Source of the DNA: Podarcis erhardii | Lineage: Eukaryota | Direction: 5' to 3' (one strand) | NCBI GenBank assembly: GCA_964252035.1 | Contig: OZ176212.1 | DNA length: 64,000 bases | In this document: positions 996 to 28,400 of the stretch, piece after piece | Layout: the number at the start of each line of letters is the position of its first letter | Numbering within the stretch: the first letter of the stretch is position 1 | Made by a program: the position numbers and the translations under genes | Notes under the pieces: model-generated | Seen by the model: only the letters and a program-made list of their open reading frames with translations | Databases searched by the model: none | What the model was told of the DNA's origin: nothing

Positions 996-8428
<7,433 letters not shown>

Positions 8429-19400: not shown

Positions 19401-22400
19401 CATCCGTGCATTTGTACATCTGCGTGTGCTTTCCTCCATCCATCCATCCATCCATCCATACATAGCTTGACCCCATTCCTGAAACCCAGGAGGTTCCAAG
19501 GCTAGAGTGCCTCAGAGCACGTGTGAATGTGCCCAGTATTAGGAACCTCTGAGAAGAAGAAGTGGCTCTTGCCGATTTCTGTGATGTCACAATATCCTTT
19601 GGCAGCCAGAGGTGTCATCGTTCCTCTGCTGGGATGTCGGTGGGTGTCCCTGGGCAGCTGGGCAACGGGTGACTCGGAGAGACTGTAAAGAGACTGAATT
19701 TTACCTCCGCAATGAGCTCAGCAGGGTGACCCTAAGCAAGCTGTTCTTGCCCTCCTCCCAAAATCTGTTTTACAGGGGTGGGGAGAGGATATTGAACTGA
19801 AGTTAGAGGATTTTTTGGAAGTGCCACTGAAATTATATACAAATGGCTCAAGACATTCAAAGTCATTCTCTTGTATTATCAGCCACTGTATATACCGTAT
19901 TTTTTGCTCTGTAAGACTCACTTTTTCCCTCCTAAAAAGTAAGGGGAAATGTGTGTGCGTCTTATGGAGCGAATGCAGGCTGCGCAGCTATCCCAGAAGC
20001 CAGAACAGCAAGAGGGATTGGTGCTTTCACTGCGCAGCGATCCCTCTTGCTGTTCTGGCTTCTGAGATTCAGAATAATTTTTTTCTTGTTTTCCTCCTCC
20101 AAAAACTAGGTGAGTCTTGTGGTCTCGTGCGTCTTATAGAACGAAAAATACGGTACATGTTTTTTACTAGGAGTAAGGTCAGTAAGAGAACCTCTGCAGC
20201 ACAATCTGATAAATGTGGGTAATGCAAGCAGTGAATTCAGGGATGAGAAGGACCTTCATGGCTCTACTGGGGTCAGTAATAAAGACTGGCCACTGGATAA
20301 CAGTCTTGTAGCAGGGGGGAGATGGCAATTTGAGGGATGCAGGCAGAGACCCCGATGTGGGTTGAGAGGCCTTTGGGTTCATTCCAGCCTTCTTTGTTGT
20401 TCTGGCTGCGGCTGATGGGGTTGTAGTTCAGAGGCACCAGGATGGCAAAGGCTGAGCCCCTGGGAGTGTGCGCTAGGGGCCATATTCAACTAAGTCATCA
20501 TATTCAGAATAGACCCACTGAAATCAATGGACTTAAAGTTACCCACACCTGTTTATTTCAGTGGGCCTGCTCTGAGTATGATTATGGTTGAACCTTTCAT
20601 GTGTGAAGCTTTACCCCATTGCTTTATCTCCATGTAAACTTTATTTGTTAAATACTTGCTTGTAAGACTGTAGTTTGCAGAACATATGGGCTGAGCTAAA
20701 CCCAGTTTGTAATCTGAATATATTTTCATTGTGGTATTTTCAGGTAGTGAAAAACACAGTCTTCAGGTTGCTTCTCAAGATGAAGACAGTCAGCCAACAG
20801 TACGTGATATGGCTCTCTTAATTGAACAAGTAATGGGAGTTCCAATTTCTTTTCAGAAACTGATATATAAAGGTAAGTAACGCGTTTATATTTGCAGCAC
20901 AATCCTATGCATGGCGACTCAGAATTAGGCTCCACTGAGTTCAATGGGGCTGATTCTCGTGTGTATAGGATTACATGCAAAATATCAGTTAGAACTGGTC
21001 TTAAATAACCATATACAATTGGGTGAGGATTTATTTTTGCTGAATAGCTATGCTAATTTCATCTCTTTTTTAAAATTGATTCATCCAGAGAACAGATCAT
21101 AAATCAGTTAAAACTACAAAGTGAGTTTTATTCATCACATGCTGAAGTACGTGCATGTATTGTGAGAGAGAACAATTAATCACCAATATTCATTCTTCTG
21201 TTTTTCTTACTAATATATTTGCCCAGGCACTGTGTATTTGAGTCAAGCTTACACAACTTTGGGCTCATCAACCAGAACATAGCCTACTAGGCATGTATTA
21301 TACAGGAGATATGAGAGGCTTGTTGAGCCCATGATAAAGAGCTATAATGGATGGTGGGCATTGTTCACATTAATGGGCTACAGTGTGCTGGGTCAGTTTT
21401 AGTGTTTCAAATTTATTATAGTGCATGTAGTTTGAAAAGGAACATGAATGGTATTACTGCTACACTAATTTCCGGGATTCTCGTAACCATTTTAAGGTAT
21501 TAGGAACCTGTGAGAGAAGAATAACAGGCTCTTGCCAATTGTTGAATTTTATTTTATTTTATTTTATTTTATTTTATTTTATTTTATTTTATTAAACTGA
21601 GTATCAAAGTAACGCTAAAAACCTTTTCAGATGATTTCATTTGTCTTCTGTTTCCGTTTTGTTTTGAAAAAGTTTTGTTTTGTGCTTTCCTTTTAAAGAG
21701 AACTAAGCTGGATATTTTATCAAATAAATAGAGCCTCTTAAAAATTATGTTTAATGAGCACAGCCTGTTCTAGTATAAGCAGCTGATTCTCTGTGATGTC
21801 ATAATATACTTTGCAGTCAGAGGTGTCATAGCTCCTCTGCTGTGATGTCGGTGGGTGCTTGGACAGCTGGGCAACTGACTCAGAGAGACCGCAAAGACCT
21901 TCGAATGTGAATTTTGAAATCTATGAACAACTGTTGTTATGTCATTAAGGTGTGCCATAGGCTTCCAAGTGATACCTTGTATCAATATCAACAACGAGCA
22001 TTTTTGGAGCCTTTTATGTTAATCAGGTGACGCTTTCAGCTTTATGCTGGTATAGGTGTATAAAAGGTATGTAAGTTGTTCCATATTTGTAAATGAACGT
22101 AAAACTGACTCTTCATTTTGTTTGCTGAAGTTTCCCAAGTAAATTTGTAGGTTTCTTTGTTTTTCCTCCTAGGAAAATCCCTGAAAGAAATGGAACAGCC
22201 TTTGGCAACATTTGGAGTTAAAAACGGTTGTAAAGTCATGCTGATTGGAAAAAGGGTAACTTTCATTTTATGAAGGCTGTGTCTCTCTTTTCCCTCTCTC
22301 TCTCCCTCCACACACACAAACACACATGGATGAACATGTATCGTTGAGCTTCCTAATATGAGAAGTCATATTTTTCCCCCTTGGTATTCAATAAAACATT

Positions 22401-25400
22401 TTTTTTAATAGATTTTTATTAAGATTTTAAAAGTTACATGAATAAAAAAAATAACAAAAGAAAAACACCCAATTAAACAAAAAAGAAAAGAAAACAATAC
22501 ATAAAAACAAGTCACATCAAAGAAAAAAAAGAAAAAAGAACAAATCAAACCTTTACATAATTTTCTTTCTTTAGCTTATTTCCTTGACCTCCTCACACCT
22601 CCCCTCTTTGTATTCTGGTTCAGTTAGATATTTCAGCAAATCCTTCATCTTTGTTTTTATCCTAATAATTTATCTTAATATACTGTAATTTTACATTCTC
22701 TTCTTTCACCAATTAACCATCCATTTTTACTTTATTTAATCTTATTTCTCATTAAAACTAATATATTTGAACTTAATTTCTTAAGACATTTCCCCTAGGG
22801 TCATAAAAATTTCATTCCACGATTTTTCCATCTCTCATTAATTTTTTAAAAAATCTCCATTTATACACTTTATTTTTTTTTTATAAATATTTATTAAGAT
22901 TTTAAAATATAAATGCACACATAATAAACAATCTTATTTCTGTCATAACAATTTCATCACTTCTTTGGACTCCCTCACGTCTCCCGCTCCCATTTGCATT
23001 GTTAAAAATTTTTCCACACAAATTATCAACTTGTTTTCAATCTCATGTCCATTCATTCAAATATAATCTAGCACTTCTTCCCAAAAAATTTTATATTTTC
23101 TTTAGTCTCACTTATCATCAAATTTAGATCTAATTTAGTGGTGAGCAGTTTTTTTATAATCCAGCATCCTTCTTAAAATTCAACCAAATTACAATGTTTT
23201 TGTAAATACATTTTGAATTTCTCCCAGTCTTCCTCCATCTTCTCTTCTCCCAGATCACGGATTCTGCCGGTCATCTCGGCCAGTTGCATATAGTCCATCA
23301 GCTGCATCTGCCACTCTTCCAGTGTGGGTAGATCTTGAGTTTTCCAGTTTTTTGCGATAAGAATCCTTGCTGCTGTTGTTGCATACATGAAAAATGTTCG
23401 ATCCTTCTTTAACACCTTCTGGCCGACAATACCCAGGAGGAAGGCCTCTGGTTTCTTTGTGAAGGTATACTTAAATACCTTTTTCAGTTCATTATATATC
23501 ATTTCCCAGAAGACCTTCACCTTAGGGCATGTCCACCAGAGGTGAAAGAATGTTCCTTCATTTTCTTTACATTTCCAACATTTATTATCAGACGAATGGT
23601 ATATTTTAGCAAGTTTAACTGGGGTCATGTACCATCTATATATCATTTTCATAACATTTTCCTTCAGAGCATTACATGCGGTGAAGTTCAGCCCAGTGGT
23701 CCACAACCTTTCCCAGTCCTCACATAATGTTATGCCCAATGTCCTGTGCCCATTTTATCATAGCCGATTTAACCATTTCGTCTTGTGTATTCCATTTTAA
23801 CAGCAAGTTATACATTCTAGATAGAACCTTAGTCTTTGGTTCTAACAATTCAGTTTCTAACTTCGATTTCTCCACCTGGAACCCTAACTTTTTATCATTT
23901 TTAAAAACTTCTTTAATCTGAGCATAATGTAACCAGTCTCGCACCTTATCCTTCATTTTCTCCAAACTCTGCAATTTCCAATTGTCTCCATCTTTTTCTA
24001 ATATTTCCCAATATTTTGGCCATTTGGCCTCCATATTGGGTCTTTTTAGGGCCTTAGCCTCCAGAGGTGAGAGCCACCTTGGAGTTTTATTTTCCAGTAA
24101 GTCTTTTGTCCAGACATTAAACACTGCTTTCCTGACAATATGGTTCTTAAAGGCCTTATTGATCTTAACTTTATCATACCATAAGTATGCATGCCAACCA
24201 AAAGCATTGTTAAAACCTTCCAGGTCCAGCACGTCAGTGTCTTCGAGAAGTAGCCAGTCTTTTAGCCAGCAAAAAGCTGCGGCTTCATAGTACAACTTTA
24301 AGTCTGGCAGGGCAAAGCCCCCTCTTTCTTTCGCATCTGTTAATATCTTAAACTTAATTCTGGGCTTTTTGCCCTGCCAGACAAATTTAGATATATCTTT
24401 CTGCCACTTCCGGAAGCACTCCGTTTTGTCCACAATCTGCAATGTTTGAAACAAAAACAACATTTTTGGCAATACATTCATCTTAATAGCAGCAATTCGG
24501 CCTAACAAAGAAAGCTTCAATTTTGTCCAACTATCCAAGTCTCTCTTAATTTCAGACCAGCATTTTTCATAGTTATCCTTGAATAGACTCAGGTTTTTTG
24601 CTGTTATGTTTACCCCTAGGTACTTTACCTTTTTAACCATAGTTAATTCTGTTTCTCTCTGAAACCGTTCCGACTCTATGTCTGTCAAATTTTTTCCCAA
24701 CACTTTGGTTTTCTGTTTGTTTAATTTAAATCCCGCCACCCGACCAAAGTCCTGTATCAATTGTAATACTCTTTTCGTACTAGATTCTGGCTCCTGCAGG
24801 GTCAAAACTAGGTCATCTGCAAAAGCTTTAAGTTTATATTGTTTCGCTCCGACCTGAATCCCTTCCACCAACCGGTCCCCTCTGATCATGTTCAAGAGCA
24901 CCTCCAGAACCGAGATAAATAACAGAGGGGAAATCGGGCAGCCTTGTCGTGTTCCTTTTTCAATTTTGAACTCTTCTGTAACCACATTATTAACTATCAG
25001 TTTGGCCTTTTGTTCTGAATATATAGCATCAATCCCATTCTCAAACCCCCGTCCCACTCCCATTTCTTTCAAATTTCCCTTCATAAATTTCCAAGAAATA
25101 TTATCGAAGGCCTTCTCCGCATCTATAAAAATTAACACAGCTTTTGTGTTTATGTCTGTTTGCAGAAGTTCCAAAATGTCAATAATGTTCCTAGTATTAG
25201 CAAACATATGTCTACCTGGGAGAAAGCCTGCCTGGTCTTTATGGATTACTTCATTAAGAACTCTTTTATACACTTTAAATTCCCAATTTTCTTCCACCGT
25301 CTCCCCTCCCGGGTCTCGGCCCCTGCCATCAGTTCCATCAACCTCCTACAGTCCATCAACCTGGAGATCTTATATCCGAGGCTCTTAACTCTTCTTAACT

Positions 25401-28400
25401 TCCCTTCTGCCGATCATTTTGATAATCTTTGGTGCTAAAAAGCAGATCTCGGGGGAGCTCCAACACAACAATGCTTATATTCCTTCTTAACAGGTCTGCC
25501 AGATTTCCATAGTTAAAGCTAGGGCCCATAAAGTATTCCAAATCTTGTTTCACAATTCTTCCAAGTCCAAAGGCCCCAAAAGCTCCAATCTCCTCCTGGC
25601 TCAAATTCATATCCCAAAATCATTTGATCCCTGCACAAGGGGATCTCCCCACCTTTCCTTTTCCAGATCAGGCCAGGTTCCCATCTTCAAAAATTGGCTT
25701 CTCCTAATTACAGTCATATAAGGCCTCAAGTTGTAATCCTCCATTTGCCTCTGTAGGGTTAAGGCTCCCCCTTGTATTGCTTTATACTCAACAACAGCAA
25801 CTTTCTCCTTCTCTGATTCATCAATTTGTTCAGTTGAGAAAGATTCCTGTGCCGGGTTCTTGTCGACTTCTATGCTGATGCCCACTTTTGTTCCCAAAAT
25901 ATCAATATTAGTAGCCATGACATCTATCTGTTTATGCAGCTTTCCCAACAGATAGATTGTCCTATTCAATAAAACATTTGCTCACTTGCTATTTCTTCTC
26001 AGGCGCAGAGCACTTGCTCTCCAGTAAGGAAAACTGACTATGCTTTTGTTTCCCTGTTTTTTCACTTTTGGAGGGGGTAGTTTTATCCGATCCCTGGCTT
26101 GGATCCACTATTTGCACTGCTGCACAGCCTCTTGAACAAGCATGAGCAGACGATGTCTCTCCGTGCAGCACTGCAATGTGTTACAGGATGAGATGTGGTA
26201 AATAAGGAAGGCTGCAGCACATAAACCCTAGTGGATCACAAAAAGATTTTGAAAAGGAGCTTGCACAAGCAGATGAACTTCTCTAGATTTAGTGTCAGCT
26301 ATCCTGCAATACTCCTCCACTAACTTAGAAGCAGCTCTTCCACTCAAGCCCCTGATTTTAGTGGGACTTAGTGCCTAACTTGCTGTGGATTCTTTTCCCT
26401 TTTTCTAATGTCTTTTCTGCCTTCTGTCCTCTCTGTTCTTCCCATGTTGCTCTTTTTTTGTTCTGTTTATCTTAAAATGTATTATTTTGCCTTTTAAAAA
26501 ACCATTCACAAGGCAGTACGCAAAACATCTTCAAATAATGGAGCCTTAATTAACCAATAACCTTCTTTTACTGTACTTGTTCCTACCCAATAAACTCTCT
26601 GTTCTCTACTGAAATTTTTATGTGCATTGCATATCTGTGATAACTTCTCAAACAGAACTGGAAGGAACCCAAATCATCTAGATTGGGGTGGGGAACCTGT
26701 GCCCCCGCTCCCCTTGATGTTGTTAGAGTACAACTCATATCATATTTGAACATTGGCCAGGCTGGCTGGAGCTGATTGAGTCCAGCAACATCTGGGGGAC
26801 CACATATTTTTTACCCCTGATCTAAATAAACTTGTTTTTTGAAAAGGAACCCCTCCTTTTCCTAACGATGCAATTTAAAATACATGCATCTTCCAAAATC
26901 TTAACTCTAGCTGTGTGCTACTGCTCTTGATACTGTTTTCTTTTGCCGAAGAACATAAAATAATAACTTCTAGGTACATATTAGTATTTGCCAACAGCAG
27001 TAACCATCTTTACTTGGTTGCACATCCATTGAAATAGTGAGTCTATTGATTTTTAAAAAAAAACAACACCAAGCAAATTGATAACTGTTAGAAGTAGAGA
27101 GAAGCAAGGGTGCTGAATGGAGTAATAGCAAGCTTCTAAATCTTTGTTATTGTATGCTAGAATAAATGTATCATAAATGTTAGGATTGATGTAAACCTGT
27201 GCCATCTTGTTCTAAATTACCCAGAATAGTCCAGAAGAAGAGACTGAATTAAAGAAATTGAAAGATTTGGAGAAATCTGTGGAACAAATAGCAAAAAAAA
27301 TAGAAGATGTTAATAAAGAGCTTGGAGGTATTCAAAAAGTAAGTTGATTTCTTATTTCAATAGTTTACCTAGCTTTATAATTTTTAATTGTTGATACTAT
27401 ATTTCCTAATTTAAATGAATTTACCTCAAAAGATCGGTCACTTATCTTGATATTTATGCCTCTTCTAGAAAAATGCTCTAGCTATTTCTTGACTCCTCTT
27501 TTAATCCTTCAAAATAATAAAGGGTATATAATAGTATTTTGATAAACAACATGATAAATTATATTATCTAGATAAGATGTCTTCAGGTATGCTATGAGTA
27601 AATTTTTATGAGAAATTACAATTTCCATACAGGGATTTCTAGCAAAGAATCTTCAAACTGAAGCTCTTAACCAGTTGGACAAGCGGATCAAGGGAACCGC
27701 TGAACAGTTTATGAAGATTCTGGAACAAATTGATGCCATTGTGAGTAAACAATTATAGCAATAAGTTGTTGATCTCTGAAAGAACGTTTAGTTGTACTTT
27801 CAAGTAATATTGGCTTCGGAATAGTAGGCTTTCCTAGTCACTTAGTAGACACCAAATTAATGGCTTTTTAGGGCTCTTTTATGAACCCGTTGTTTCCCCA
27901 CTGATAAATAGGTATCTCTGTTACCCTGCCCATTTTCTGTAACACAAAAACAATAGTTCCATATACACTTTCTGCATAAGGCATCCTATTATCATTTATC
28001 AAATTATTCACTATATTCAGTTTACTAATGTTCCCACTCCAGAAAAGCGACACAGCCGTCCCCCCCACCCACCCACGCAGAGGTTTGTGCATAAATGAAA
28101 TCACGTCAAGTGGGGAGGACCTTCTAAAAAGCCTCTAAATGCCTGTTTTTCCCCTACTCTCCAGCTCTCCACACAACTCTCTCTCTCTTCAAGTAGTTGA
28201 AGTTCTGGGGCCGGCTGGAGGACGCGTGGGACAGCGGTGGCTGCTACACTGCCCCATGTGTCAGCTGGTAGGTGGGGAGGCTCAGCAGCCTAAACAAAGC
28301 CCCACTGCACCTCAGGTCTCTTTGGGGCTTCCTCTGCCCTCACTGACGTCCTCTTCAGGCTCTGGAGAGGGCCTCCTTACGAGCCACGAGGACTCTCTAG

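What the first reader, a model, noticed from the sequence alone, without database searches (positions are those of the whole stretch)
22385..25979. TSD-bounded retroposon with an L1-type 3' end but an unrecognised protein-coding region
Seen: a 17-bp direct repeat TATTCAATAAAACATTT (22385-22401, 25963-25979) brackets a minus-strand element with a poly(A) tail. Removing the nested L1 leaves about 1.16 kb. Seen: the two ORF-track ORFs (25607-25969 and 25395-25610) join with a single 1-bp deletion in a T run (GAT TTT [T]GG GAT ATG). That frame continues through one TAA and three TGA to a stop at 25275-25277, giving 214 codons from ATG 25918 (228 from the truncated 5' end): ...[12 protein letters not shown]...[56 protein letters not shown]...[11 protein letters not shown]. 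All three TGA are followed by TGG. Inference: these are CpG-decayed CGA, giving repeated Arg-Trp. Established: L1 ORF2 ends in a CCHC knuckle and ORF1 has coiled-coil/RRM/CTD domains; I see neither here. Inference: a non-autonomous, L1-mobilised family carrying its own protein, or an L1 lineage with an extra ORF between ORF2 and the 3' UTR. I cannot tell whether it is already catalogued.
Basis: partly seen in the sequence, partly recalled or inferred. Interest (0 to 1): 0.8.

Follow-up and report, generated by a model that had tools for sequence, protein, structure and literature searches.

The report
Dead lizard half-L1 copy, mini-ORF1
This is a broken, front-truncated copy of a lizard "half-L1" jumping gene that has lost the LINE-1 copying enzyme but kept a shrunken LINE-1 ORF1 gene. 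The kind of element is known from mammals, and this copy is ordinary.

Summary
An exact 17-bp target-site duplication bounds a minus-strand retroposed unit of 1,156 bp. A younger 5'-truncated L1 with its own 13-bp duplication splits it.

The "unrecognised" ORF is not a new protein. It belongs to a small lizard family of 201-215 aa proteins. A profile of that family matches a bona fide Podarcis L1 ORF1, as judged by its position in that L1 (29 bits, E 9e-8; best of 1000 shuffles 8.3 bits).

Full-length relatives start about 14 nt inside an L1-type 5'UTR. They carry only this mini-ORF1, then a roughly 35-codon remnant of the ORF2 end, then an L1 3'UTR. That is the layout of a HAL1-like ("half-L1") non-autonomous element.

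The family ORF ends at ...RSPG followed by a stop. In the window this stop is TGA 25358-25356. The three TGA-TGG are therefore not decayed CGA codons. The first is the true stop, and the next two are LM codons of the ORF2 remnant read in another frame.

The window copy lacks the first 10 codons. It also has one 1-bp deletion and one TAA, so it is dead.

The scan had already noted HAL1-like elements elsewhere in this genome. I rate the family a new member of a known kind, and this locus is ordinary.

The parts
25963..25979 (-). 5' copy of the outer 17-bp target-site duplication
   Evidence: Exact direct repeat D5. It sits directly upstream of the element's truncated 5' end.
25356..25962 (-). 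Remnant of the mini-ORF1 (codons about 11-212 of a 212-codon ORF). It includes a 1-nt deletion at the T run 25616-25619, a TAA at 25397-25395 and the true stop TGA at 25358-25356.
   Evidence: 70% aa identity to P0001. 80% DNA identity to L001 over 878 bp. Codon-level alignment. Family alignment A1. Homology to L1 ORF1.
25265..25355 (-). Non-coding remnant of the last ~35 codons of L1 ORF2 (the ORF2 tip). It contains the second and third TGATGG and the 13-bp site later duplicated by the nested L1 (25265-25277).
   Evidence: Local alignment to the nested L1's ORF2 end scores 63, against 24+-4 (max 49) for shuffles. BLASTN homology to the L013 L1 starts exactly at the mini-ORF1 stop.
22873..25264 (-). 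Nested, younger, 5'-truncated L1: reverse transcriptase to the end of ORF2 with one frameshift, then 3'UTR and a 10-A tail.
   Evidence: RVT_1 E 7e-29. 96% aa identity to a Podarcis muralis RT protein. Own duplication D11.
22860..22872 (-). Second copy of the nested L1's 13-bp target-site duplication
   Evidence: Exact repeat D11.
22402..22859 (-). L1-type 3'UTR of the outer element: T-rich tract, AATAAA at 22420-22415 and a short A run at 22406-22402.
   Evidence: Outer 604-1156 is 66% identical over 585 bp to the ORF2 tip plus 3'UTR of an L1 in L013. Outer 830-1072 is 71% identical to an L1 3'UTR in L012. The last ~50 nt are 80% identical to the nested L1's end (D2). T-rich 3'UTRs are described for lizard L1 (PMC5381506).
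22385..22401 (-). 3' copy of the outer 17-bp target-site duplication
   Evidence: Exact direct repeat D5.

Best explanation
The outer unit is a dead, 5'-truncated insertion of a lacertid HAL1-like (half-L1) retroposon. The family arose from an L1 by internal deletions.

A full-length unit of about 2.0-2.1 kb has four parts:
- an L1-type 5'UTR of about 0.8 kb, which I infer carries the promoter;
- one ORF of 201-215 codons, a shortened ORF1;
- a non-coding stump of the last ~35 codons of ORF2;
- an L1 3'UTR with AATAAA and poly(A).

The shortened ORF1 keeps the N-terminus, a short coiled coil, the first part of the RNA-recognition motif (RRM) and part of the CTD. It has lost about 50 residues of the N-terminal region and roughly the second half of the RRM.

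The family has no endonuclease or reverse transcriptase. Its RNA must therefore be copied into DNA in trans by the ORF2 protein of an autonomous L1, through target-primed reverse transcription. That step is inferred. The target-site duplication, the A tail and the 5' truncation are the footprints that are actually seen.

The mini-ORF1 protein probably trimerises through its N-terminal helix and coats its own RNA, or joins L1 particles. This too is inferred.

In this window the copy was cut at codon 11 on insertion. It then acquired one frameshift and one nonsense codon, and a younger L1 later inserted into it. It has no function here.
For: Anatomy.

Family:
- phmmer against 1.84 billion representative proteins gave only 5 hits, all lizard-type Logan contigs.
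- Three intact lineages (212, 215 and 201 aa) share start, end and stop position.
- dN/dS is 0.39-0.55 at dS 0.8-1.2.
- Two different copies (L009, L014) come from one run. One of them is interrupted by a sequence that begins like the conserved lizard L1 5' end (PMC5381506).

L1 origin of each part:
- 5'UTR: L002 1-314 is 77% identical to the 5'UTR of a real L1 in L013. That L1 continues into ORF1 and the ORF2 endonuclease start.
- ORF: the family HMM scores 29 bits (E 9e-8) against that ORF1, with a best of 8.3 bits among 1000 shuffles. BLASTP gives E 4e-4 for the N-terminal part and 0.005 for the CTD part, both colinear. A colinear DNA match of 74% over 46 nt lies at the NY..L..LLRRN motif.
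- Tail: homology to the ORF2 tip plus 3'UTR.

Coiled coil:
- AlphaFold2 predicts a helix at residues 3-44, the only confident segment.
- The trimer model of P0001 1-60 scores 0.76, against 0.02 for the best of 3 controls. That mark was reached by 21 of 30 solved pairs and 0 of 23 single chains in the calibration.
- The runs agree in at least 76% of contacts, and partner pLDDT is at least 68. Contacts are in register at heptad spacing.
Against: - I could not count copies in this genome.
- The species behind the Logan runs are unknown to me.
- Homology to ORF1 rests on a single real ORF1 sequence, and part of the match is coiled coil.
- The AlphaFold2 model is poor beyond residue 44 (pLDDT 39 overall), so no fold comparison was possible.
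- Trans-mobilisation by L1 and any activity of the protein are inferred, not shown.
- The trimer pass used three copies, unlike the calibration. The tool also warns that a pass can come from memory of solved complexes, so it may reflect general coiled-coil likeness.
Confidence: 0.85

Rival explanations
1. The ORF belongs to a domesticated host gene derived from L1 ORF1, comparable to mammalian L1TD1. The window holds a processed pseudogene of its mRNA.
For: - The ORF is intact and under moderate purifying selection in three lineages.
- Very few relatives exist in the protein collections.
- L002, L003, L010 and L015 come from four runs and are 98-99.6% identical. One orthologous locus would look like that.
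Against: - The intact relative L002 starts about 14 nt inside the conserved L1 5' terminus. It still carries the ORF2 stump and a whole L1 3'UTR.
- At least two diverged copies lie in one run, one of them with a decayed A tail.
- The scan noted many RT-less ~2-kb units in this genome (unchecked).
Confidence: 0.07
2. The unit is a one-off, internally deleted L1 copy that was dead on arrival. It is not a member of a propagating family.
For: Only one copy lies in the window.
Against: The same junction, with the mini-ORF1 stop abutting the ORF2 tip, is shared by L001, L002, L004 and L005, which differ by dS of about 1. The deletion therefore predates much propagation.
Confidence: 0.03
3. This is an L1 lineage with an extra ORF between ORF2 and the 3'UTR. 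The window copy is an ordinary 5'-truncated L1.
For: An ORF2-derived stump follows the ORF.
Against: In L002, L005 and L014 the ORF is directly preceded by the 5'UTR, not by ORF2. The ORF itself is ORF1-like.
Confidence: 0.02
4. The frame is a chance open stretch in non-coding L1-derived sequence.
For: No Pfam, PDB or Atlas match. The structure model is poor.
Against: The 201-215 codons stay open in three lineages at dS of about 1, with dN/dS of 0.4-0.55 and a conserved stop position. Pfam also misses the real lizard ORF1.
Confidence: 0.03

Closest known systems
Mammalian HAL1 (half-L1) elements (Smit 1999; Bao and Jurka 2010, as cited in PMC5753468 and PMC5786205)
   Same: An L1-derived non-autonomous element that keeps the 5' and 3' parts of L1. 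It encodes only an ORF1-type protein and has no ORF2. It is presumably mobilised by L1 and leaves a target-site duplication and an A tail.
   Different: It arose independently from a lacertid L1: its 5'UTR, ORF1 and tail match Podarcis L1. The ORF1 is much reduced (about 212 aa, against roughly 360 in the L013 L1) and lacks about half of the RRM. A ~35-codon ORF2 stump is retained as non-coding sequence.
Other ORF1-present bipartite non-autonomous LINEs: HeT-A (Jockey clade) and Ag-Sponge (CR1 clade) (PMC5786205)
   Same: The same logic applies: an internal deletion derivative keeps an ORF1-like protein that may multimerise with the autonomous partner's protein.
   Different: They belong to different LINE clades and hosts. 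HeT-A has a telomeric role, and nothing of that sort is indicated here.
Autonomous lizard L1, clade 1 type (PMC5381506)
   Same: The conserved 5' terminus, the long 5'UTR, the T-rich 3'UTR, and AATAAA plus poly(A).
   Different: No endonuclease or reverse transcriptase, and a truncated ORF1.
L1TD1 (domesticated L1 ORF1 gene of mammals, PMC4161310)
   Same: An ORF1-derived protein maintained by selection.
   Different: L1TD1 is a single-copy host gene. Here the units keep L1 termini and occur as dispersed, decaying insertions.

Membership tests
HAL1-like (ORF1-only L1 derivative) | 5' part derived from an L1 5'UTR | tested here: met
   Met for the family. L002 1-314 is 77% identical to the 5'UTR of the L013 L1 and starts about 14 nt from its 5' end. 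L005 and L014 share later 5'UTR blocks. The window copy is 5'-truncated and has none of it.
HAL1-like (ORF1-only L1 derivative) | Single ORF homologous to L1 ORF1 | tested here: met
   The family HMM scores 29 bits (E 9e-8) against an ORF1 identified by its position in a real L1, with a best of 8.3 bits among 1000 shuffles. BLASTP gives E 4e-4 and 0.005, both colinear.
HAL1-like (ORF1-only L1 derivative) | No ORF2 (endonuclease or reverse transcriptase) between the ORF and the 3' end | tested here: met
   In L001, L002, L004, L005 and the window the ORF stop is followed within ~100 nt by the ORF2 stump and then the 3'UTR. The only RT in the region belongs to the nested L1.
HAL1-like (ORF1-only L1 derivative) | L1-type 3' end, A tail and target-site duplication | tested here: met
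   The A run is only 5-8 nt long.
HAL1-like (ORF1-only L1 derivative) | A propagating family: many copies share the deletion junction | tested here: inconclusive
   At least five distinct copies or lineages share the junction, and two lie in one run. No genome-wide count was possible. Scan notes list 18 HAL1-type findings in this genome, unchecked.
HAL1-like (ORF1-only L1 derivative) | Complete ORF1 architecture (coiled coil + RRM + CTD) | tested here: not met
   Alignment to the L013 ORF1 shows loss of about 50 N-terminal residues and of the stretch between ...AFR/GxxR and the CTD motif NY..L..LLRRN. This lowers the claim of a full ORF1, not the claim of ORF1 derivation.
Mammalian HAL1 families (Repbase HAL1, HAL1B, HAL1M8) | Descent from mammalian L1 lineages | tested here: not met
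   All parts match lacertid L1 sequences. The origin is therefore independent: the element works like HAL1 but is not a member of those families.
Processed pseudogene of a host gene | Matches an intron-containing parent gene, with non-TE UTRs | tested here: not met
   No host protein matched. Both UTRs are L1-derived.
Autonomous L1 | ORF2 with endonuclease and reverse transcriptase | tested here: not met
   The outer unit has only a ~35-codon ORF2 stump. The family ORF shows no DNA similarity to the nested L1's ORF2.

The most novel reading that the evidence does not exclude
The mini-ORF1, which has lost half of its RRM yet is kept by selection, is not merely a leftover. It may be a specialised parasite protein that enters L1 ORF1p trimers or particles through its coiled coil to capture ORF2p for its own RNA. 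In that case it would act as a dominant-negative brake on L1, or it could be on the way to host domestication as an L1 restrictor.
Probability: 0.15. Interest if true: 0.6.

Novelty: new member of a known kind. Interest (0 to 1): 0.3.

Why it matters
For this locus, very little: it is a dead, 5'-truncated insertion in non-coding DNA.

At family level it shows that ORF1-only "half-L1" parasites of L1 also arose in lizards, not only in mammals. The paper searches here found HAL1 described only for mammals.

The lizard version keeps a much reduced ORF1 under purifying selection. That makes it a natural experiment on which parts of ORF1p are needed for a non-autonomous RNA to be copied by L1.

There is also a practical point for annotation. 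Pfam does not recognise even genuine lizard L1 ORF1, so such ORFs will keep being flagged as unknown proteins.

Tried and rejected
- Pfam on the window ORF pieces and on the intact relatives gave nothing relevant.
- Both ESM Atlas searches scored below 0.8, which is uninformative.
- A profile of the family against PDB sequences gave only chance hits, with E above 0.6.
- The search for homologous proteins with the 120-aa piece found nothing. With P0001 it found only P0001 and P0002. The length filter applies to both.
- AlphaFold2 on the 11-row alignment gave pLDDT 39 and pTM 0.20. It was too poor for a fold search, so I ran none.
- I tested whether the ORF is a frame-shifted piece of ORF2. Alignment scores against the nested L1 were no better than shuffles, so I rejected this. 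My early impression of a likeness to the ORF2 C-terminus (QM.DY) was also dropped.
- L011 and L012 (P. lilfordi) held only 5'-truncated L1 copies. The usable full-length L1 5' half came by luck in L013.
- Bao and Jurka 2010 (PMC2923044) is not held. The HAL1 definition is taken from the papers that cite it.
Broken frames were searched as separate pieces.
Full report
**1. Observation**

Read on the minus strand, the region has these parts in order:
- the 5' copy of the 17-bp duplication (25979-25963);
- 698 bp of element;
- a nested L1;
- 458 bp more of the element, ending in AATAAA (22420-22415) and a short A run;
- the second copy of the same 17-mer (22401-22385).

The repeat finder reports this 17-mer as an exact two-copy direct repeat. 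No other direct repeat that long occurs in the 4 kb (D5).

The insert at 25264-22873 carries RVT_1 (E 7e-29) and ends in ten A. It is flanked by an exact 13-bp repeat (D11). One of its protein pieces is 96% identical to a Podarcis muralis reverse-transcriptase protein. The host is therefore a Podarcis-like lacertid, and the nested L1 is young.

Removing the nested L1 leaves 1,156 bp. The rejoined sequence is colinear with relative L001 across the join. No second copy lies in the window.

**2. The ORF has relatives, and they fix its true limits**

Pfam, the ESM Atlas and a length-restricted protein search gave nothing. An exhaustive phmmer search of 1.84 billion representative proteins gave five hits. 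The intact ones are:

| Protein | Length | Identity to the window piece |
|---|---|---|
| P0001 | 212 aa | 70% |
| P0003 | 215 aa | 36% |
| P0005 | 201 aa | 37% |

The other two hits are broken copies. All five come from Logan contigs of 1-1.9 kb and carry no names.

The intact proteins begin MA..., and those of 212 and 215 aa end ...RASDLRSPG; P0005 ends ...RASDVIDPG. All are followed by a stop at the same position.

Aligning the window copy to L001 codon by codon shows the following:
- The window copy starts at codon 11.
- It has one GAA-to-TAA change (25397-25395).
- The family's real stop is TGA 25358-25356.

Between the three intact lineages dS is 0.8-1.2 and dN/dS is 0.39-0.55. A 200-codon frame would not stay open at that divergence by chance.

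**3. What lies around the ORF in relatives**

Downstream, all relatives continue into sequence homologous to the window's tail. L005 ends in a T-rich tract, AATAAA and a decayed A-rich tail.

Upstream:
- L002 has 810 bp before the ATG.
- L005 and L014 have about 470-580 bp.
- These regions share conserved blocks.

L014 and L009 come from the same run, so one genome holds at least two diverged copies. L014 is interrupted by sequence that begins GAACTTCCGGTG. This resembles the conserved 5' terminus of lizard clade-1 L1 (GACTTCCGGTG; PMC5381506). These contigs are therefore genomic DNA that carries nested insertions.

**4. Every part is L1-derived**

I fetched Podarcis lilfordi loci through proteins that matched the nested ORF2. 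Locus L013 happens to hold, on its minus strand, the 5' half of a real L1. It has a 5' terminus and 5'UTR, then an ORF with a coiled coil and the motif NLRIRAVPE, which is ORF1 by position. Then comes the typical ORF2 endonuclease start...SWNYNGLNSP...LQETH.

(a) 5'UTR. L002 1-314 is 77% identical to that 5'UTR and begins about 14 nt inside its 5' end.

(b) ORF.
- A profile of the family hits that ORF1 at 29.0 bits (E 9e-8). The best of 1000 composition-matched shuffles scored 8.3 bits.
- The profile match runs from family positions 24-148 to ORF1 positions 101-223. That covers the end of the coiled coil and the first part of the RRM, including DFW..(D/N)L and AF(G/R).
- BLASTP of P0001 gives E 4e-4 for this part. 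It gives E 0.005 for the CTD piece (NY..L..LLRRN...L.F), colinear with the first match.
- A 46-nt DNA match (74%) lies at the same place.
- The N-termini also resemble each other by eye (MA.DG.K..EL). No call tests this point.

Compared with the roughly 360-aa L013 ORF1, the family has lost about 50 residues after the N-terminus and roughly the second half of the RRM.

Pfam does not recognise even the real L013 ORF1.

(c) Tail.
- From the stop codon onward, the window element is 66% identical over 585 bp to the ORF2 end plus 3'UTR of another L1 in L013.
- Its first ~100 nt align to the last ~35 codons of the nested L1's ORF2. The score is 63, against 24+-4 (max 49) for shuffles.
- In that alignment the repeated TGATGG of the window lines up with CTG-ATG-G of the ORF2 frame (...LMDY...). 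The first TGA is the mini-ORF1 stop. The other two are Leu-Met codons of a non-coding ORF2 stump in another frame. None is a decayed CGA.

**5. Mechanism**

Shown:
- The unit has L1 termini, one ORF1-derived ORF, and no endonuclease or reverse transcriptase.
- Copies carry target-site duplications, short A tails and a 5' truncation.
- The nested L1's target (TTT/AAAG) fits the L1 endonuclease preference. That preference is from my own knowledge.

Inferred:
- Transcription starts from the L1-type 5'UTR.
- The mini-ORF1 is translated.
- An autonomous L1's ORF2p performs reverse transcription in trans at a nicked target.

For the protein, AlphaFold2 is confident only for a helix at residues 3-44. 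A three-copy model of P0001 1-60 gives the following:
- It scored 0.76, against 0.02 for the best of 3 controls. In the calibration that mark was reached by 21 of 30 proteins solved as pairs and 0 of 23 solved as single chains.
- The runs agree in at least 76% of contacts, and partner pLDDT is at least 68.
- Contacts are in register at heptad spacing.

This supports a parallel coiled coil like that of ORF1p but does not show it. The job had three copies, unlike the calibration, and such passes can reflect general likeness.

Whether the protein binds RNA with half an RRM is unknown.

**6. Comparison with known elements, and novelty**

The closest known kind is HAL1. It is a non-autonomous derivative of L1 that encodes only ORF1p and arose several times in mammals (PMC5753468). 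It belongs to the ORF1-present "bipartite non-autonomous LINEs", together with HeT-A and Ag-Sponge (PMC5786205).

The lizard family works like HAL1 but arose from lacertid L1. It is not a member of the mammalian HAL1 families, and its ORF1 is unusually reduced.

Two full-text searches combining HAL1 with reptile or non-mammalian terms brought up no paper describing HAL1 in reptiles among those listed. Repbase and Dfam could not be consulted.

The scan itself had already noted HAL1-like units on other DNA of this genome. One follow-up reached the same "mini-ORF1" reading. I treated these notes as leads and tested the points on my own loci. I cannot show that those notes concern the same family.

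**7. Limits**

- The ORF1 comparison rests on one real ORF1 sequence.
- The species of the Logan runs are unknown.

**Verdict**

The locus is an ordinary dead insertion. The interesting part is the family, a lizard half-L1 with a selected mini-ORF1. It is a new member of a known kind and was already seen elsewhere by this scan.

Noticed in passing
window 3186-3350 (+): An exon-like ORF with a Lyase_1 hit (E 5e-12). Its sequence reads like a fumarate hydratase exon, so the window lies next to or within the FH gene.
   Followed up: partly
L014:824-1043: A family copy from run ERR13935990 is interrupted after about 118 codons by sequence that starts GAACTTCCGGTG. This resembles the conserved 5' terminus of lizard clade-1 L1, so it is a nested insertion of a full-length L1-type element.
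   Followed up: partly
L013:604-2643 (-): P. lilfordi L1 5' half with 5'UTR, ORF1 (one frameshift) and the ORF2 start directly after the ORF1 stop. Pfam Transposase_22 does not detect this genuine ORF1 at E up to 0.1, so lizard ORF1-like proteins are systematically missed by Pfam.
   Followed up: yes
L001:1-30: The contig begins with a motif (...CTTCCAACTCTATGATTCTATGA) that looks like a common sauropsid repeat. Only about 70 nt of family 5'UTR follow it. This intact-ORF copy therefore appears 5'-truncated and promoterless.
   Followed up: no
window 23720-23739 (-): The nested L1's ORF2 is split by a small deletion after ...DIGHNIM, relative to the P. lilfordi homologue P0011. This young L1 copy is therefore also dead.
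   Followed up: partly
window 22300-22345: A short GT/GA microsatellite-like tract (TGTGTGTG..., GAGAGAGA...) lies just outside the 3' target-site duplication.
   Followed up: no
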